A stretch of 64,000 nt of DNA from Octopus sinensis. Taxonomy: Eukaryota. The notes beneath the pieces were generated by a model. It had not been told where the DNA came from. It saw only the letters and a program-made list of their open reading frames with translations, and searched no databases. Positions 3,765 through 58,564 of this stretch are shown piece after piece. Numbering within the stretch: the first letter of the stretch is position 1; every line of letters starts with the position of its first letter. Where the stretch lies: contig NC_043002.1 in assembly GCF_006345805.1 (NCBI RefSeq), positions 7,254,001 through 7,318,000 on the forward strand. Direction: 5' to 3'. The position numbers and the translations under genes were made by a program.

Positions 3765-4003
3765 CTGTATCTCCCGTATCATCTCGTTTCCGTTTCACGC
3801 TTCCATTGTTGAGATTTCCTGGATTTTGTGAACTGATTCCCAGAATGCCACTAATAGAATAGGAACCTGGTCGTGTCAGAGCTTCTGCTCCTGATGGCGT
3901 CTGCGACTGTGCAATTCCAGGATTTGGAGCTTCGACTTGAAGCGAAGGACTTGATTGAGGTGGTTGGCCTTTCGCCTTTTCTGCTGCTCGATTTCGGACT
4001 ATT
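3765..4003 (-). CDS. Pax2/5/8: Pax2/5/8 internal exon (239 bp): paired-domain tail, linker, octapeptide and basic NLS-like motif
   Basis: Acceptor T-tract+AG (AG at 4005-4004), phase 2. Hand translation: (R)IVRNRAAEKAKGQPPQSSPSLQVEAPNPGIAQSQTPSGAEALTRPGSYSISGILGISSQNPGNLNNGSVKRKRDDTGDT(G). Octapeptide YSISGILG at 3861-3838, KRKR at 3795-3784. Donor G|GTAAAA at 3764-3763, phase 1. Length 1+79x3+1 fits both phases. Confidence 0.93.
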
Positions 4004-8254: not shown

Positions 8255-8648
8255 ATACATATATACATATGTGAGTGGATTCCAAAATGTGGGCGCGTGT
8301 ACGTCTATGTTCATACGTATGTGTATATGTTTCTTTATATCGGTAACCACTTGTAGAAGAGTGCCGGCGATGATGTTAGTTCATCCTGTCCACAAACTGT
8401 TTGTGTAAACAGCTAAAATACAAAAACAGGCTAGGATTAGTATCACAAACGGTCTGTAAAGCGAAGCCTCAAATAACGTACACATCTTTCGCATGCAAGC
8501 ATGGAAATACGAACATAGAGCGAAAGGACAAATGAACGAATGAGAGAGAGAGAGAGAGAATGAATGAATGTTGGTGCGTATGGTGTTTACAATATCACCA
8601 TTGTGTTTTCAATATGTACCTGTTAATCAATATGTACCTGTTAATCGA

Positions 8649-8813
8649 GGCAGCGAGTGGATAGAATCGTCAGCTCGCTGGGCGAAATGTTTCGCGTTCT
8701 GTGCGCAAATTCCGCCGAACACAACTTTGGCAGTTACGTACTGAGGTCGACGTACTCGACTTATCCCCTCCCCGGAAACTTCTGGACTTGTACTAAAATT
8801 TGAAATCGATATT
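8649..8813 (+). mobile_element. tRNA-derived SINE (family A, internally deleted) with 14-bp TSD overlapping the Pax exon donor
   Basis: Starts GGCAGCGAG (family head GGCGGCGAGCTGG) and ends AAAATTTGAAATCGATATT like other copies. Flanked by identical TACCTGTTAATCGA at 8635-8648 and 8814-8827. Confidence 0.85.
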
Positions 8814-8816
8814 TAC

Positions 8817-9014
8817 CTGTTAATCGAACTGACACTCGGTACGTTATCTTGGCTGCAAATATTCTCTGACAACAATCGGTCTCTGATTTCCCATGCAAAC
8901 ATTGTAGGATTTTCCTGTTTGTAACGAGCAATAGCTTCAACAACTTTTGGCGTTGCTACCTTCGGCTTGGAACCACCTATCACACCCGGCTTTATTGAGC
9001 CTGTTTCATAATAT
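8817..9014 (-). CDS. Pax2/5/8: Pax2/5/8 internal exon (198 bp), C-terminal (RED) half of the paired domain
   Basis: Translates (R)[65 protein letters not shown](R). Acceptor tttttcttcAG (9016-9015) joins in phase 2 to the previous exon (AG|A = Arg). Donor AG|GTAAAT at 8816-8815, phase 2. Confidence 0.97.
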
Positions 9015-9172
9015 CTGAAGAAAAAGGAATAAGAAACTTTATAACAATGATGCAAACAAGTAGATATATGCACACAAAAAAGAAATATACAAACATGCAA
9101 ATAAAGATATACATAAATGCATACATAAACACATATACACACACACACACGCATGTACACACACATATATGG

Positions 9173-9174
9173 AC

Positions 9175-9245
<71 letters not shown>

Positions 9246-9302
9246 CAAATAGACAGATAGACAAATAGATAGATAGACAAATAGACAGACAGACAGACAG
9301 AC

Positions 9303-9355
<53 letters not shown>

Positions 9356-9366
9356 TACAGACAGAC

Positions 9367-9440
<74 letters not shown>
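9173..9440. repeat. Compound (GATA)n/(GACA)n microsatellite
   Basis: Directly visible; ~160 bp upstream of the exon acceptor at 9015. Similar arrays at about 32640-32775, 39707-39785, 40250-40420 and 61557-61746. Confidence 0.95.
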
Positions 9441-9441
<1 letters not shown>

Positions 9442-10368
9442 AAATTCCGCTGTGAAAAGAGAAGTAGAGAAGAGAAAAATTAAAAATCAAATAAATTACA
9501 AAATTGTAGCAACATCAGATTAAAATAAAATAGCCATTTTTGTATTATACGTAACGAATATACACCGTTGACAGACTGATGATGCTGTCTCCGACCAAGA
9601 TAAAGCTCTTATATATGTCATGTGTTGAAAACCAAACAGCGAGATATATAAATCTATATTATATTATGTTTAATCTTTTGCTAATCTCTGCCTTGAATGA
9701 ATTTAAACGAAGAGACAGACCATAGGCAGTAGAGATTTCATACAACTAAAAGTTTTGATTTATTCTCTGAGCCAATGGTCTTAGAACCAACTGTATTCCA
9801 GTTAACCATCCCGTCTTTATTTCTTCGTATATTGTATATGAGTTCAGTGTGCGACCTTCTTTTTATTTGTTGAAGACCGTATGACGTGGTTTGATGAAGA
9901 TATGACAGTTATTTATAACAGGCCGTGCTACCAGGTAGAGGTTTCCTCATCGGCTTATTTAGGATATTTCAGTATTGTTTGTTGTTACTTCACGTGTGAG
10001 CGTTCGAATCTAACTCTGGTCGATTAAAAGCATGGATTTAATAACGAGATAGTCAAATCGCACAATTTCAGTAGAAAATATATAGACCATAACTACTACT
10101 ACTACTACTACTACTACATTATTTCGTTGCAAAATTGACTGTAGAATGTTGAAATTTTTGTCATACAGCTTATTCAATATCAAAATAAAGGATATACATA
10201 CGCAGGTATACACTTTATGTATATATATAGAGAGAGAGACATAGGGTAGATAGATGGATTGACAGACAGATAGATAGATAGATATCATCATGTCTCCATG
10301 GCATGAAACTATTAGTTGGTCTTATTTAAATACTGTGTACTGCTTTTTATTCATCCTAAATATAACGC

Positions 10369-25276: not shown

Positions 25277-25442
25277 CTTCCAAGTATTTTACTGACACAG
25301 CCATGAGATACGCGGAGCTGTCGAGAGATATCACAAGGCCGTACCCCTTGGTGGGCCAATTCCACAATCCGCTGGCGAACGGCATCTGGTAGAGGTCGAC
25401 CATTTACAAATACCCCTCCTAATTGGTTAACACCTCCGTGAC
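25277..25442 (-). CDS. Pax2/5/8: Pax2/5/8 internal exon (166 bp), N-terminal (PAI) half of the paired domain
   Basis: Translates (G)[54 protein letters not shown](R), nearly identical to the vertebrate PAX2/5/8 paired domain. Acceptor ttttcctttctccgtAG (AG at 25444-25443, phase 1) and donor AG|GTAAGG (GT at 25276-25275, phase 2). Intron positions match PAX2/5/8 (established knowledge). Confidence 0.97.
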
Positions 25443-37000: not shown

Positions 37001-37591
37001 CGAAGGCGTTAATGAGTGGAAGACTGAAAAGGGAAAAAGAAAAATGTGAGGGAACGAAAAAAATAAAGATATGAGGAAATAGAAATAGTGGGAAGAGTAA
37101 GGGGCAGAGGAGGGAGAGAGAAAGATGGAAGTGGAAAAGGTGGCAGAGTAATGGAGGGAGTAAGATAACCTTAAATGAATGACAGAGATTGCTGTAAGAT
37201 TGAAAGGTTGTACAAATGACAATAATTCTATTAATGGAAACGCTGGTGGTAATTGTAGCCATGGTTTCTGCTGATAAAGGAGCCGCCTAGAGACTCTATG
37301 CAATATCTCGACCTATTAGAAATAGCAAACAAATCCCACCACCTAAAGTGTTTCTTATGTAGTGGTACTAGCAGTGGTGATGTTAATGGTGACGGTGGTA
37401 GTAGTATGGTGTTGGTATTGTTGGAGGGAGGGACAAAGGGGACGGTGTGATTAGATGACTGTAGTGGTGCTGGTATAGTAACAGACATGACGGAATGATC
37501 ATGATGGTTGGCACCTGCAGTGATTGCAATGATGGTAATATGGCGATGGTAGAATGGTGTTGACGAAGTTGGTGGTTGCTGAGATTATTCA

Positions 37592-38032
37592 TTTAAAATT
37601 TTGGCACAAGGCCAATAATTTCTAAGGAGGGTGTAAGTTAAATACATCCACCCCCGTGTTCAACTGGTACTTTATTTTATCGACCCGGCAAGAATGAATG
37701 GTAAAGTCGACCTCAGCAAAATTTGAACTTAGAAGGTAAATACGAATGAAACGTTGCTGGCATTTTGCAGGAAGTTCTAAAAGTTCTGCCAGTTCGCCGC
37801 CTTCTTTATAATAATGTTTTCAAATTTTGCCACAAAGGTAGCAATTTTGTGAGAAGGGGATGAGTCGATTACATCGACCCCAGTTTTAACAACTGGTACT
37901 TATTTTATCGACTCCGAAAGGATGAAAGGCAAAGTTGACATCGGTGGAATTTGAATTCAGAACGTAAAGACAGACAAAATGCCGCCAAGCAGTTTTGCCC
38001 AGCATGCGAACAATCCTGGTAGCTCACCGCCC
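37592..38032 (-). mobile_element. Tandem pair of family A SINEs (type-2 tail)
   Basis: Two same-orientation copies (37592-37801, 37817-38032), each with a GGCGG(C/T)GA head and a ...CC(T)TTGTG(G/C)CAAAATTT tail. Confidence 0.85.
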
Positions 38033-38387
38033 TGATGGCTGTGATTATTGTAGTTATGGTTGGGCAACAACATCGGTGGAATGGATACGACGGTGAGACA
38101 ATTGCAGTAACGATGGTGTGACTATGTTTGCAGAAGATAGGACGATTATGGTCGGATGGCTGTTGCAGTTCTGGTTTCGATGATTGTGATGATTCTTCAG
38201 TGTATATGATGGCAGAATGAGTATAATGGGGGTGTCGGTAAAATGATGATTGTTTGGCTCTGTTCGTTGACGAAGTAAGAATAAACGTTTCGGGTAGTGT
38301 AGTCAAGATGAAGGCAGTGCTGGCTGCGATGTGTTGGAGTTGGTGGTTGTTGCATTACTGAACACCACAACAGTGGATGTTATTATA

Positions 38388-42718: not shown

Positions 42719-43690
42719 ATATAGATGTACACATCACTTTCCTCACTAGTACAGGTAAGGATTCAGTTCCCTTTTTCACAAGCGCACACACACGCAAGCA
42801 CAAATATACACACAGAGTATTATATATATATAGTTTATAGTATTGAACTATGAGAAAATGATATAGGGGCCTGATGATTGGGGTTATATTTTAAGAATGG
42901 TTTCAGCAAAACATAGAGTGGTTTAGGAACCGGGAAATGTACCTCATGAAACACGTGTAGCCAAGTTATAAAATAGTAGGTATTTAAAACAAAAATTCTT
43001 TTTTATATGGTGAGATGAAGGGGCCTACTATCTCTAAATGAATATAAATGTGTATATATATATATATATATAAAAGGATGTGTGAGTGTGTGTGTGGAAT
43101 GCTAGGTGAACGTGTAATACGTTTTTAATTCCCGTCACCATTGTCAAAAATGCAGCATCTGGTCAAATTTATTCCGAATGGTAACATATGTATTAACTGT
43201 TGCCCTCATGGATGAATAATCTTTTACAAATATGACTTCTGTTTCTGGTTTGTTTGTTTGCTCTTGTTTGTAGATTTTATCAACGTCATTTTATTTTTAT
43301 TTTTTTATTTTTACTTCGTTCACTTTTGTAGTCTCATATGACCGCGCACCCAACTCACAACCATCTACGCAACGTTTATTGATTTTTGTTTGTTCTTTCT
43401 TTTTTATTTTCACTTACGTTTCTGATTTGGAAAATGATAAGCAAAAACATTTAATAATAGAAATATTAATTTTTCTGAAGTAGAAAAAAAATATATAATT
43501 AAAAAATTTCAACACTGAAAAATATAAGAAATATGAATGAGAGAGATACTGGGTTTAAAGTGGCATGTGCACCGGTAGGAAAACGTACGTAAGAAATTTG
43601 CTTAGCCTCCACGTAGTCCCCTGTTGAAACCCAATGAGTGGGCAAGAGCGTTCTAATGCTGCTAAGCATTTTGCCTGCCTTAACAATAAT

Positions 43691-44094
43691 CCTTTCTACG
43701 ATAGGCACAAGGCTTGAAATTGTTGGGGAAGGGATAAGTGGATTACATCGACCCCAGTGCATAACTGGTACTTAATTTATTGACCCGGAAAGGATGAAAG
43801 GCAAAGTCGACCTCGCTGGAATTTGGACTCAGAAGGTAATGACAAACAAAACGCCGCTAAGCATTATGCCCGACGTGCTAACGATTCTGCCAGCTCCCCG
43901 CCTTAATAGTAATAATCATTTCTACTAACGGTACAAGGCCTGAAATTTGTCGGGAGGAGACTAGTCGATAACATCAACCCTAGTGTTTCACTGGTACTTA
44001 ATTTATTACCCCGAAAGGATGAAAGGTAAAGTCAACCTCAGCAGAATTTGAACGTAAAACGTAAACAAGAACGAAATGCCGCCAGCTCGCAGCC
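43691..44094 (-). mobile_element. Tandem pair of family A SINEs
   Basis: Copies at 43691-43902 and 43919-44094 (the second internally deleted), separated by an AAT-rich spacer. Confidence 0.85.
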
Positions 44095-52928: not shown

Positions 52929-53235
52929 GTTATTATTGAGCGATGAGATAGGTGAGTGCAAACCTATTTAGCCAGCCCCAAATATTTCTCAAGTATTGAC
53001 TTGACTTCTTGCAGGAACCGAATTATCTAAGTCAAGTTGTAAGTAGCAACAGCGTTGCACCCGAAATAATGCACATATTTACAATACAGTAAAGCAGCTA
53101 TGCTGTTGGTTTTACAGTTACCCTTGTGTCAGAAGATGTTCTCCTACCACAGTGACACAAAGTTTAATAGCCAGATGATAATGAGAATATACACGCATGC
53201 ACACACACACACACATAAATCACGAAATACATACC

Positions 53236-53443
53236 TATTTCTTTACTACCCACAAGGGGCTAAACACAGAGAGGACAAACAAGGACAGACAAACGGATTA
53301 AGTGCGTAACTGGTACTTATTTAATCGACCCCGAAAGGATGAAAGGCAAAGTCGACCTCGGCGGAACCTGAATCCAGAACGCAGAGGAAATACTGCTCAG
53401 CATTTCAGCCAGCGTGCTAACGTTTCTGCCAGCTCGCCGCCTT
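53236..53443 (-). mobile_element. Family A SINE, type-1 tail, with 20-bp TSD
   Basis: TAAATCACGAAATACATACC at 53216-53235 and 53444-53463. Confidence 0.93.
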
Positions 53444-54338
53444 TAAATCACGAAATACATACCGTCATTTTACAGAGGATCTTCGCCAGCCTCAATTTTG
53501 ATAACGGATTAAATGAGTCAAAATTGCTTTAAAAAGAGCACTCATTCTTATAAAGCCACATAACTTGTCATTCAGAAATCCTGTATATCAGGAGTTATAT
53601 AAATTAAATTTTTATTAAATTTTATTAAAATATTGTTGTATTTAGGAATAGTCATTTTGCCAGTTTAGCCAATAAAAACACACGCACTATATATTTGGTG
53701 TTACAGTGTCCTTCAGCTCCTTGCTATGGCTCACGTTGTTACGTTTATATATTTGTTTTGCACGATTTTTGATGTGAAATCGTGTGTTGAATAATAATAA
53801 TAATAATAATAATAATATAATAATAATAATAATAATAATAATTGTTCGTAAATAACTTTTGTAGACATGAAGTTTGTTATTCAGTCAATATGCTACACAC
53901 GAATCTTTAAATATTAAAATACAATATTTCATGGGATCCCAGAAATTTCTCACAGAGACCACATAGTGAGACAGTGTTCTAAATAGATACCTAATAAAAG
54001 TAACTATATATCGATGATGAAATAAATGACTCATTCTGGGATATGCCAACCCACACAGACAGAATGATAAAGGTTATTCACCCAATTTTAGAAATAATCG
54101 GGGAAAATAAAAAGAATAAGGAAGTATTTCCTAATCAATATGACAGTCCAAGTAGATATTATAATTCTCAGTGAAGTGTAGAAATTATCCACATTATAAA
54201 AATAAGTAAATGGAGTTATCGGGAATGTGAAGCTAAAAAGCGAATTTATCAATAAAAACAAGTGCCTTAAGAATTATGAAAAATCTATCGTTAAAGTTCC
54301 AGGACTTATAATATGCAGAAAGATACATAATAATGATA

Positions 54339-54495
54339 TTTTCTAAACTTGGCACAAAGCAATGGATAAGACGATTACATCGACCCCATTGTTTCAGTGG
54401 TACTTAATTTATCGACCCCGAAAGGATGTAAAACAAAGTCGGCCTCGGCGGAATTTGAACTCAGAATGTGAATAATAATAATAATAATAATAATA

Positions 54496-54531
<36 letters not shown>

Positions 54532-54938
54532 AATATTATTATTATTTCTACTGGAAGCACAAGGCCTCAAATTTTGTGGGAAGGGATTAATTCGATTACA
54601 TCGACCCCAGTGTGTAACTGGTACTTACTTAATCGACCCCGAAAGGATGAAAATCAAGGTCGACCTCGATGGAATTTGAACTCCGAATGTAGCAACAGGC
54701 GAAATACCTATTTCTTTATTACCCACAAGGGGCTAAACACAGAGGGGACAAACAAGGAAAGACATAGGAATTAAGTCGATTACATCGACCCCAATGCGTA
54801 ACTGGTACTTAATTTATCGACCCCGAAAGGATGAAAGGCAAAGTCGACCTCGGCGGAATTTGAACTCACAACGTAACGCAGACGAAATACCGCTAGGCAT
54901 TTCGCCCGGCGTGCTAACGTTTCTGCCAGCTCGCCGTC
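54339..54938 (-). mobile_element. Cluster of three same-orientation family A SINEs separated by (AAT/TTA)n
   Basis: Copies at about 54339-54470, 54545-54705 and 54708-54938. Confidence 0.88.
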
Positions 54939-54986
54939 TTAATAATAATAATCATGAAAACAACAACAACAACAATAATAATAATA

Positions 54987-56073: not shown

Positions 56074-56894
56074 GATGCACCATTGAGACTATTATTGGGG
56101 AAGCTGGATTTTTAAAACTACTTAGAAGAGTTGCATTTGTTGAAGATTATTAGTGTTATCATCATCATCAAGATAAGGGTGACGAGTTGGCAGAATCGTT
56201 AGAGCGGTAGAAAAAAATATTTTCAGTATTTCAACCGGCTATCTTCCTTCTGAGTTCAAATTCTTTCGATGTCAGCTTTGCGTCTCACACTACTGGCTCG
56301 ATAAAACAAAGAACAAATTTTGTACTGAGGTCGATGGTATCTACAAAACTTCTATCCTCAAAACTGCAGGCTTTGCGTCTAAAGTAGAAATAATTATAAC
56401 CAGATAAGATAATAATAATATGCCGCGGTTGATGATAGGCAGTGAAAATATCTTGTGGAATTTAGTTACAGCTCTTTAGCTTCTGAGATCAAATCACGAT
56501 GAGGTTGACTTTTCCTTTTGTGGTTGGTTGATAAAACACGTACTAGTCATGTACTAGAGCCAACGGGCTCGATTAAAAGCCTCCAATCAAAACTGTTGGC
56601 CTTGAGCCTGAATTGGAAGCCATTATTAATATTGAATTCCTATACTAGTACAGTGCCGCAACACATTGAAATGAGCGGAGTGTGTATTCAGTTGTATTGA
56701 CACAGGGTTGATAGTCTACCTTGGAGGTGGGGGATGAAATATAGGAAAACTCAAAGCTGATTCCAGCGGAATTTAAATTCAAGATGTATAAGACTGAGAG
56801 TTAACCAGGCGTTCTATCACCATATGTTTTGCTTAATATTGATCGATTGATTAATTGATTAGCCTTGTAAATAGACGGTGGCACATGAATCTTA

Positions 56895-57170: not shown

Positions 57171-57557
57171 TTTGTGTGTGTGTGCGCGCGCTAGTAGATG
57201 CGCATATACACATACATTCATAGATGTGTGTATATATTAATTCAGCTAAATATAAATTTTGGTATCTTTTTTTGATTATGGCTTACTTAGTTCTCTCACT
57301 CACTAACTGCGAGTGTGTGCGTGCTCGAGCGCATGCGCACTTATGTATATGACTTGAAATAGAGTAACTCCTCGACAAAATTATTAACAAAATATATTGA
57401 ACGAACAATTTGAACGTGAGTGTTGTTGAACTTCAACACCTGGAAGAGAGGTGAAATTTTCACGGCGAAAAAAAAACAACTTTTTAATGAGATATTGGGG
57501 CTGTCATACAGAAGTAGATCGGTTGTTCACAATGCAAGTATTAGTACCTAAACATAT

Positions 57558-57996
57558 GCGTTGGCAATGATTTGAGATGTTTTAGAGTATTTAATAGTTA
57601 TTCTTTTCGTGGTCGTCTTTACGTTCTGAGTTCAAATTCCGCCGAGGTCGACTTTGCCTTTCATTATTTTGGGGTCAATAAAACTAGTATCAGTTGAATA
57701 CTAGGGTCAATGTAGTCGACTAGCTTCTCCCCGAAATTGCTGGATTGTGTCAAAATTTGAAACCAATATTTTGCAGGTTTAAGGTTGCGAGCTAGAAGAA
57801 TCGTTAGCACGCCAGGCAAAATGCACAGAGGAATTCGGTCTGTTTTTACGCTGAGCTAAAATGCTGTTGAGATCTACTTTGCCTTTCATCCTTTTGGGGT
57901 TGAAAAAAATACCATTTGAGTATTGGGGGTCGATATAATCAACTTAGACCCTGCTTCGAAAATACTAGCCCTGTATCAAAATTTGAAAGCAATATT
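57558..57996 (+). mobile_element. Tandem pair of degenerate family A SINEs (type-2 tail)
   Basis: Two cores (TACGTTCTGAGTTCAAATTCCGCCGAGGTCGACTTTGCC; CTACTTTGCCTTTCATCC), each ending CAAAATTTGAAA(C/G)CAATATT. Confidence 0.8.
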
Positions 57997-58564
57997 TTAT
58001 TGGTTTTACTCAATGGATTGTGGCACTTTCAGGCAACAGATTAAAGGGTTTAACCCATATAAGATCATAATATTTTGCTTAATTATTGTTTAGTTGCGGT
58101 CTTCGACCCGAGTGGGATTTGAACTAAGAAAGAGAAGGACTGTATTCAAATATAACAAGTTATTTTAGTTACTAAACTCTAAGTTTAACCCACAAAGTTT
58201 TGTTCAACGTGAAACATTGGCAGATGTCGCGTAGTAAGATCGAAGACAGATACACATGAAGTGAACTCCATTTTATCGGGTAATCTAGAATTAATTTAAG
58301 AACTCCGAGCCGCCCATGAACAAACAAGAGTATTTTCATACATGAACGCAATTCATTTGGTCCTGTTATAATTTTACAGAATAAACTCGAACTAGGTACA
58401 GCAAGTTACTTATAAAAACCTTGACAATTGCACAAGACCCAAATTATCTGCAATGACGGGTCGAACTTGATAAACAGTGCATATTTTTCAGTTAGGCAAG
58501 TCCTTGTATTTGTGAATAATGCGTTGTACCGATGGCGGAATACATATAAACAACGCTTCGATTG

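What the first reader, a model, noticed from the sequence alone, without database searches (positions are those of the whole stretch)
8635..8827. SINE insertion whose target-site duplication copied the Pax2/5/8 paired-box splice donor
Seen: the 165-bp SINE at 8649-8813 is flanked by a perfect 14-bp repeat, TACCTGTTAATCGA. On the gene strand this reads TCGATTAACAG|GTA, i.e. the last 11 coding nucleotides of the paired-box exon plus GTA. Inference: the element inserted at the exon end, and the donor now adjoining the exon (AG|GTAAAT) is a chimera of the TSD and the SINE tail, while the ancestral donor (AG|GTACAT) was displaced 179 nt into the intron. An ATAT microhomology between SINE tail and flank fits target-primed insertion. 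Tolerance of such an insertion at the most conserved exon boundary of a developmental regulator is unusual.
Basis: partly seen in the sequence, partly recalled or inferred. Interest (0 to 1): 0.8.

Follow-up and report, generated by a model that had tools for sequence, protein, structure and literature searches.

The report
SINE insertion duplicating a Pax2/5/8 splice donor
A short mobile element landed a few bases into the intron after a conserved exon of the octopus Pax2/5/8 gene and duplicated the splice signal, leaving the working copy on the exon: a tidy but ordinary retrotransposon insertion.

Summary
TACCTGTTAATCGA occurs perfectly at 8635-8648 and 8814-8827, exactly bracketing a 165-bp element. 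That element belongs to a SINE family with 29 hits in the window (nhmmer E=5.8e-23), and its head and tail match the family ends. On the minus strand the repeat is the last 11 nt of Pax2/5/8 paired-box exon 3 (9014..8817) plus GTA. Exons 2-3-4 spliced at 8817 reproduce annotated Octopus vulgaris and O. sinensis proteins exactly.

The flanking repeat extends beyond 14 nt: 18/19 and 21/23 in register. The target-site duplication is therefore more likely about 19 nt, covering 11 exon and 8 intron bases. In that case the working donor GTAAAT is wholly target-derived, not a chimera with the SINE tail. The A/C difference at donor +4 would then be one later substitution, of unknown direction. The only SINE-free cephalopod ortholog I could reach, a Sepia-like contig, reads AG|GTAAAT. 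More distant animals read GTAY at the same junction, so this does not settle it.

An 18-bp tandem duplication gives two decoy donors. Using either one puts a TAA stop straight after the exon. Octopod orthologous DNA could not be retrieved. The closest known case is the dog merle SINE in PMEL. Interest is low to moderate.

The parts
8817..9014 (-). Pax2/5/8 exon 3, the second paired-box exon (198 nt). It encodes (R)YYETGS...PSVSSIN(R) and ends ...TCGATTAACAG.
   Evidence: tblastn with PAX2 and with O. sinensis XP_036359507. Splice-site mapping, and the joined ORF of exons 2-3-4, is 100% identical to the O. vulgaris and O. sinensis proteins. Pfam PAX E=4e-72.
8811..8816 (-). Working splice donor GTAAAT, directly after exon 3. 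The only donor that keeps the reading frame into exon 4 (AG|A = Arg, then IVRNR...).
   Evidence: The SSINR|IVRNR junction is present in annotated O. vulgaris, O. sinensis and Argonauta proteins and in decapodiform transcripts.
8814..8827 (.). Exon-side copy of the perfect 14-nt flanking repeat TACCTGTTAATCGA (11 exon nt plus GTA). The in-register match extends to 8809 (18/19).
8649..8813 (+). SINE copy, antisense to the gene. Head GGCAGCGAGTGG..., tail ...AAAATTTGAAATCGATATT, with two internal deletions relative to the other window copies. Its last 5 nt (8809-8813, ATATT) may instead be target-derived.
   Evidence: nhmmer E=5.8e-23 against the family profile, which has 29 hits in the window. 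Alignments. 82% identity to the family consensus.
8635..8648 (.). Intron-side copy of the 14-nt repeat. With 8630-8634 (ATATG) it forms the 19-nt copy. On the gene strand it is decoy donor 1: CAG|GTACAT, with the junction at 8638.
8609..8646 (.). Perfect 18-bp tandem duplication (units 8609-8628 and 8627-8646, overlapping by TC). It creates decoy donor 2, with the junction at 8620.
8813..8815 (-). In-frame TAA stop immediately after the exon (AAC AGG TAA). It terminates any transcript that reads through the working donor or uses a decoy donor.
   Evidence: ORF 8813..9490 ends ...SSINR. O. bimaculoides models XP_014769898 and A0A0L8HRW6 both end at SSINR.
25277..25442 (-). Pax2/5/8 exon 2, the first paired-box exon. 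Donor AAG|GTAAGG.
3765..4003 (-). Pax2/5/8 exon 4 (IVRNRAAEKAK...YSISGILG...KRKRDDTGDT), containing the octapeptide. Donor CAG|GTAAAA.

Best explanation
A short tRNA-type SINE RNA was copied into the genome by a LINE's target-primed reverse transcription. It landed in the first bases of the intron after the second paired-box exon of an Octopus Pax2/5/8 gene, antisense to the gene with its tail toward the exon.

The two staggered nicks straddled the exon-intron junction. Fill-in therefore duplicated the last 11 exon bases plus the start of the intron. One copy stayed attached to the exon and is the working donor (AG|GTAAAT, junction at 8817). The other copy lies 179 nt downstream, beyond the SINE, as a decoy (AG|GTACAT). 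It was later doubled by an 18-bp slippage duplication.

I favour a duplication of about 19 nt (gene strand TCGATTAACAG|GTAAATAT), primed by pairing of the nicked target end ...AATAT-3' with the SINE RNA's terminal AUAUU-3'. On this reading the element sits at intron +8/+9, and the whole donor (-11 to +8) was regenerated from the target rather than patched together from the SINE tail. The one difference between the copies (donor +4: A by the exon, C in the decoys) is then a later substitution. I lean slightly towards A being ancestral, with the decoy having changed.

Shown:
- the exon and its boundaries;
- SINE family membership and element boundaries;
- the repeats;
- the frame and stop consequences of each donor;
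- the normal exon 3-exon 4 junction in octopod protein models.

Inferred:
- the duplication length;
- the priming register;
- the order and direction of the substitution and the tandem duplication;
- that splicing is unaffected in this animal.

The confidence given (0.55) is for the 19-nt variant. That this is a SINE insertion whose target-site duplication spans the donor I hold at about 0.9.
For: - Perfect 14-mer at both element boundaries, with a chance of about 1e-6 or less.
- The element is a family member with canonical head and tail.
- The flanks match 18/19 and 21/23 in register. A random window 5-mer matches the tail end at 4/5 or better only 5.4% of the time, and an 8-mer at 6/8 or better only 0.8%. 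Exactly one mismatch in 19 nt has probability 0.26-0.38 at 2-10% divergence.
- A related SINE at 53236-53443 has a perfect 19-20-nt duplication, so long duplications occur in this genome.
- New copies often sit directly on the tails of older copies: five same-orientation pairs with a gap of 84 nt or less. This fits tail-homology-guided priming.
- The SINE-free Sepia-like ortholog has AG|GTAAAT.
- All three authentic donors in the window are GTAA.
- Exons 2-3-4 joined at 8817 give 100% identity to the O. vulgaris and O. sinensis proteins.
Against: - No octopod empty site could be retrieved, so both the duplication length and the ancestral +4 base are inferred.
- A 14-nt duplication needs no substitution at all, and T at 8813 is what the family tail (..TATT) predicts.
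- At the same junction, more distant invertebrates have GTATGA, GTACGG and GTATAT. A pyrimidine at +4, as in GTACAT, is therefore plausible as the ancestral state.
- The Sepia lineage is too distant to weigh heavily.
- The tail of this copy's own subfamily is unknown: no second copy with the same deletions is in the window, and G at 8808 is unique.
- The likelihood figures are crude and were computed after the pattern was noticed.
Confidence: 0.55

Rival explanations
1. The duplication is exactly 14 nt and the SINE sits at intron +3/+4. The working donor GTA+AAT is a chimera of target and SINE tail, and the ancestral donor GTACAT was displaced 179 nt into the intron.
For: - The 14-mer is perfect, and no later substitution is needed.
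- ATCGATATT aligns with the family tail A(C/G)CA(A/T)TATT through its last T.
- GTAY donors occur at this same junction in other invertebrates.
Against: - It requires the 5 to 10 bases upstream of the 5' repeat copy to resemble the SINE tail by coincidence (5.4% for 4/5 or better, 0.8% for 6/8 or better).
- In the standard priming geometry, homology upstream of the duplication plays no role.
- The nearest SINE-free ortholog available has GTAAAT.
Confidence: 0.3
2. The duplication is 19 nt but the ancestral donor was GTACAT. After insertion, the exon-side copy changed C to A at +4, strengthening the working donor over its identical decoy. (This is a sub-variant of the 19-nt reading, differing only in which copy changed.)
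For: - The 18/19 repeat.
- GTAY donors at this junction in other animals.
- A at +4 pairs with U1 snRNA and C does not (established 5' splice site consensus).
Against: - The new base would have to coincide with the base that the SINE tail consensus has at that position.
- The Sepia-like ortholog already has A at +4.
- It needs a specific substitution rather than any substitution.
Confidence: 0.15
3. This is not a retrotransposition footprint. The duplicated junction is an assembly or polishing artefact, or a segmental duplication that happens to enclose a SINE.
For: The extra 18-bp tandem copy shows that this stretch is prone to slippage. No independent assembly of the site could be fetched.
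Against: - The repeat ends coincide, to the base, with the family-defined head and tail of the SINE.
- O. bimaculoides gene models end at SSINR followed by a stop. This fits AGG TAA after the exon in at least that assembly.
Confidence: 0.04

Closest known systems
Merle SINE insertion in dog PMEL (SILV), at the intron 10 / exon 11 boundary
   Same: A tRNA-derived SINE in reverse orientation at an exon-intron boundary. It is flanked by a 15-bp target-site duplication that contains the original splice site, so the authentic site stays next to the exon (PMC7349775).
   Different: Merle sits at a splice acceptor. Its long poly(T) pushes the branch point away and shifts splicing to a cryptic site, giving a phenotype. 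The octopus case is at a donor, the tail is short (..ATATT), nothing separates the exon from its donor, and no splicing change is shown.
Octopus tRNA-derived SINE families (OK, OR1 and OR2 of Ohshima and Okada 1994, cited from memory; SINEs are 11.6% of the O. vulgaris genome, PMC13282606)
   Same: The same kind of element: about 160-250 bp, a head resembling a tRNA, a conserved core (GAGGTCGAC...), an A/T-rich tail, and many copies (29 profile hits in 64 kb).
   Different: This copy lacks two internal blocks (about 23 and 34 nt) that the other window copies have, and its B-box-like motif is altered (GCGCAAATTCC against GTTCAAATTCC). I could not assign it to a named family, and ARAGORN and Rfam detect no tRNA.
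LINE-mediated target-primed reverse transcription with microhomology priming (L1/Alu model, TT|AAAA)
   Same: A target-site duplication of 14 to 19 nt. The tail-side start of the duplication resembles the element's 3' end. Insertions also occur onto the tails of older copies.
   Different: The tail is not poly(A), the partner LINE is unidentified, and the priming register is inferred only.

Membership tests
Octopus SINE family present in the window | Sequence homology to other genomic copies over most of its length | tested here: met
   nhmmer E=5.8e-23, model positions 33-254 of 258. 82% identity to the consensus over 164 columns.
Octopus SINE family present in the window | Element ends coincide with the family head and tail | tested here: met
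   The head GGCAGCGAG aligns with GGCGG(T/C)GAG, and the tail TTTGAAATCGATATT aligns with TTTGAAA(C/G)CA(A/T)TATT.
Octopus SINE family present in the window | tRNA-derived head with pol III A and B boxes | tested here: inconclusive
   ARAGORN and Rfam find nothing in the window. The family has a B-box-like GTTCAAATTCC, but this copy reads GCGCAAATTCC.
Retrotransposed insertion (TPRT) | Direct target-site duplication abutting both ends | tested here: met
   14/14 perfect, and 18/19 when extended.
Retrotransposed insertion (TPRT) | Empty (pre-insertion) site in related genomes | tested here: inconclusive
   A Sepia-like ortholog lacks the SINE, but it is too diverged for the intron to align. Octopod loci could not be retrieved.
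Pax2/5/8 | Paired domain | tested here: met
   Pfam PF00292 E=4e-72 over residues 1-122.
Pax2/5/8 | Octapeptide after the paired domain | tested here: met
   YSISGILG in exon 4.
Pax2/5/8 | Orthology to annotated cephalopod Pax2/5/8 | tested here: met
   100% identity over 201 aa to O. vulgaris CAI9724962 and O. sinensis XP_036359507, and 99% to Argonauta hians.
Pax2/5/8 | Partial homeodomain and C-terminal transactivation region | not testable with these tools
   The downstream exons lie outside the window.
Splice-altering boundary SINE (merle type) | Antisense SINE at an exon-intron boundary, with the splice site inside the target-site duplication | tested here: met
   Comparison with PMC7349775.
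Splice-altering boundary SINE (merle type) | Measurable shift of splicing to a cryptic site | not testable with these tools
   No RNA-seq is available. Protein models from other Octopus species show the normal SSINR|IVRNR junction.

The most novel reading that the evidence does not exclude
The insertion first created a perfect second copy of the donor (11 exon and 8 intron bases) 179 nt downstream. Selection for splicing fidelity then disabled the decoy through the A-to-C change at +4. Alternatively, read-through or decoy use, which meets TAA straight after SSINR, gives a regulated Pax2/5/8 isoform containing only the paired domain. The O. bimaculoides gene models that stop at SSINR would be a hint of this.
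Probability: 0.08. Interest if true: 0.55.

Novelty: new member of a known kind. Interest (0 to 1): 0.3.

Why it matters
Mobile elements are strongly depleted within a few bases of splice sites. This case shows concretely how such an insertion can be harmless: the staggered cut spans the junction, so the duplication hands the exon back a complete donor.

It also leaves two natural decoy donors and an immediate stop codon. That makes it a small natural experiment in splice-site choice in a conserved developmental regulator, and a possible presence/absence marker among octopods.

It does not change what is known about Pax2/5/8 or about SINE biology.

Tried and rejected
1. Fetching octopod orthologous DNA failed.
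- The Argonauta gene spans 201 kb, so no DNA was returned.
- The O. vulgaris and O. sinensis isoforms are not on record, nor is O. bimaculoides A0A0L8HRW6.
- Window ORFs spanning each SINE junction are not on record either.

2. The JGI metagenome scan for the exon end found nothing. A 17-mer specific to this SINE subfamily gave 76 hits, all chance matches, with none extending beyond 20 nt. The subfamily tail therefore remains unknown.

3. ARAGORN and Rfam found no tRNA or RNA family in the window.

4. CpG content as an age proxy did not work. This copy has an observed/expected ratio of 1.57, but the other copies range from 0.44 to 1.88.

5. Automatic detection of target-site duplications for the other copies was unreliable because head-finding failed, and no significant duplications were found apart from this one. 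I therefore do not claim a family-wide pattern.

6. The pre-mRNA fold of 8590-8850 shows no significant structure (z = -0.36), so I dropped the idea that the decoy donors are sequestered.

7. I could not identify the window's species. The mariner-like N-terminus of the O. bimaculoides model is not in the window, and the proteins are identical across the three Octopus species.

8. Outgroup donors at this junction vary at +4, so I withdrew my initial weight on Sepia's GTAAAT.

Full report
**What is at the coordinates.** The + strand reads ...TTTTCAATATGTACCTGTTAATCAATATGTACCTGTTAATCGA|GGCAGCGAG...(SINE)...AAAATTTGAAATCGATATT|TACCTGTTAATCGA|ACTGAC.... The 14-mer TACCTGTTAATCGA is perfect at 8635-8648 and 8814-8827. 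With a per-base match probability of 0.273, a 14-mer match at the element's boundaries has a chance of about 1e-8, or about 1.5e-6 with 5 nt of slack at each end. In a scan of the window for perfect direct repeats of 14 nt or more at 30-400 nt spacing, nearly all hits are microsatellites or SINE-to-SINE matches. This pair is one of a handful in unique sequence.

**The gene.**
- The minus strand carries three exons of a Pax2/5/8 gene: exon 2 at 25442..25277, exon 3 at 9014..8817 and exon 4 at 4003..3765.
- The paired domain scores E=4e-72 against Pfam PF00292, and exon 4 contains the octapeptide YSISGILG.
- Joined at the mapped splice sites, the three exons give a 201-aa open frame. It is 100% identical to O. 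vulgaris CAI9724962 and O. sinensis XP_036359507, and 99% identical to an Argonauta hians model. This includes the SSINR|IVRNR junction.
- Exon 3 ends ...TCGATTAACAG, followed by GTAAAT.
- The intron position is old. A Sepia-like contig and several unidentified invertebrate contigs all break at ...AACAG|GT.

**The element.**
- A profile built from six other copies finds 29 hits in the 64-kb window. It hits 8646-8814 with E=5.8e-23 across model positions 33-254.
- The element begins GGCAGCGAGTGGATAGAATCG, against the family's GGCGG(T/C)GAGCTGGCAGAATCG. It ends AAAATTTGAAATCGATATT, against the family's AAAATTTGAAA(C/G)CA(A/T)TATT. Both repeat copies therefore abut family-defined ends.
- It lies on the + strand, antisense to the gene, with its tail toward the exon.
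- It lacks two internal blocks that the other copies have, and it is 82% identical to a crude family consensus. Other copies with similar divergence have no detectable flanking repeats. This copy is therefore probably from a younger, distinct subfamily. No second member is in the window, so I could not show this.
- ARAGORN and Rfam report nothing. The tRNA ancestry rests on the published description of octopus SINEs, recalled from memory.

- The flanking match does not stop at 14 nt. In register, 8630-8648 (ATATGTACCTGTTAATCGA) against 8809-8827 (ATATTTACCTGTTAATCGA) is 18/19. 8626-8648 against 8805-8827 is 21/23.
- A perfect 18-bp tandem duplication (8609-8628 and 8627-8646, overlapping by TC) gives a third copy of TACCTGTTAATC. 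This makes a second decoy donor at 8620.

**How long is the duplication?** In target-primed reverse transcription, the nicked bottom strand pairs with the 3' end of the RNA. The bases that do so become the tail-side start of the duplication. This is established for L1/Alu (TT|AAAA).

If the duplication instead starts at ATAT, it is 19 nt: on the gene strand, TCGATTAACAG|GTAAATAT. The target end ...AATAT-3' would then pair perfectly with the RNA's terminal AUAUU-3'. The only mismatch between the copies is 8813 T against 8634 G, which is the +4 base of the donor (A by the exon, C in the decoys).

Supporting figures:
- A random window 5-mer matches the tail end at 4/5 or better in 5.4% of positions, and an 8-mer at 6/8 or better in 0.8%.
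- Exactly one mismatch in 19 nt has probability 0.26-0.38 for 2-10% divergence between the copies.
- A related SINE at 53236-53443 (minus strand) has a perfect 19-20-nt duplication, GGTATGTATTTCGTGATTTA.
- Five same-orientation pairs of copies sit head-to-tail, which fits priming on tail-like sequence.

I therefore favour the 19-nt reading. In it the element sits at intron +8/+9, and the working donor is entirely target-derived. This remains an inference. The 14-nt reading needs no substitution, and T at 8813 is what the family tail predicts.

**Which +4 base is ancestral?** The only SINE-free cephalopod ortholog I could reach is L001, from ENA assembly ERZ21867824.
- Its exon is 97% identical in protein and 79% in DNA.
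- It contains an exact 20/20 match to the published Sepia officinalis pax2/5/8 primer GACCATGTTTGCCTGGGAGA (PMC5333810).
- Its protein segment VEAISKYKQ matches decapodiform transcripts P0245 and P0246.
- It reads AACAG|GTAAATGTTTCC, with no SINE.

That lineage is very distant, however. Three more distant, unidentified animals read GTATGA, GTACGG and GTATAT at the same junction. The +4 base is therefore labile, and the question stays open.

**Consequences for splicing.**
- Only the donor at 8817 keeps the frame into exon 4.
- Reading past it gives AAC AGG TAA, a stop directly after SSINR. The decoys at 8638 and 8620 would add 179 or 197 nt, both a frameshift and both behind that stop.
- The working donor CAG|GTAAAT departs from the U1-complementary consensus CAG|GTAAGT only at +5. 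The decoys CAG|GTACAT depart at +4 and +5. All three authentic donors in the window have GTAA.
- Two O. bimaculoides gene models (XP_014769898 and A0A0L8HRW6) end at SSINR, and the rest of the gene is annotated separately. This fits AGG TAA after the exon in that assembly. It more likely reflects prediction stopping at the stop codon than a real isoform.
- The pre-mRNA around the element has no significant predicted structure (z = -0.36).

**Comparison with what is known.** The closest described case is the merle allele of dog PMEL. There, a tRNA-derived SINE in reverse orientation sits at the intron 10 / exon 11 boundary, flanked by a 15-bp duplication that contains the original splice acceptor (PMC7349775). 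Its long poly(T) displaces the branch point and causes cryptic splicing. In the octopus case the site is a donor, the tail is short, and nothing comes between the exon and its donor. SINEs make up 11.6% of the O. vulgaris genome, with a burst at a Jukes-Cantor distance of about 0.065 (PMC13282606). Among that many insertions, a few at exon boundaries are to be expected.

**What could not be done.**
- Octopod genomic orthologs were out of reach.
- The subfamily consensus could not be built.
- The species of the window could not be fixed.

**Verdict.** This is a genuine SINE insertion whose target-site duplication spans the exon 3 donor of Pax2/5/8. It is a new example of a known kind of event, probably neutral, and of low to moderate interest.

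Noticed in passing
window 37586-38057, 43681-44085, 54330-54957, 56158-56628, 57524-57999: SINE copies of this family repeatedly sit head-to-tail in the same orientation: five pairs with gaps from -2 to 84 nt. New copies appear to insert onto the tails of older ones, or else the family amplifies as arrays.
   Followed up: partly
window 53216-53463 (minus strand): A related SINE shares the same head and core but has a different 3' module (...GTTTAGCCCCTTGTGGGTAGTAAAGAAATAG). It is flanked by a perfect 19-20-nt duplication, GGTATGTATTTCGTGATTTA. This looks like a second young insertion in the window.
   Followed up: partly
window 9140-9490 and 8543-8560: Long (CA)n and (CTAT)n/(CTGT)n microsatellites begin about 125 nt upstream of the exon 3 acceptor. 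A (GA)n run lies just beyond the decoy donors, so the exon is boxed in by repeats on both sides.
   Followed up: no
proteins P0359, P0002, P0365, P0366 (O. bimaculoides models): In the older O. bimaculoides annotations the gene is split. One model ends at SSINR followed by a stop, another starts further downstream, and exon 4 is in neither. O. vulgaris, O. sinensis and Argonauta have continuous models.
   Followed up: partly
protein P0242 (O. sinensis isoform X8) against window exon 2, 25442-25419: This isoform lacks HGGVNQLG at the start of the paired domain. It appears to use an alternative acceptor 24 nt inside exon 2, which would trim the first beta-hairpin of the paired domain.
   Followed up: no
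window 15410/15724, 26179/26339, 48295/48582, 46111/46153: Further non-repetitive perfect direct repeats of 14-27 nt at 42-314 nt spacing. These may be target-site duplications of other insertions.
   Followed up: no
The search for homologous proteins behaviour: Listed hits never exceeded about 1.75 times the query length. Padding the 201-aa query with X residues to 339 aa was needed before the full-length octopod Pax2/5/8 proteins appeared.
   Followed up: yes
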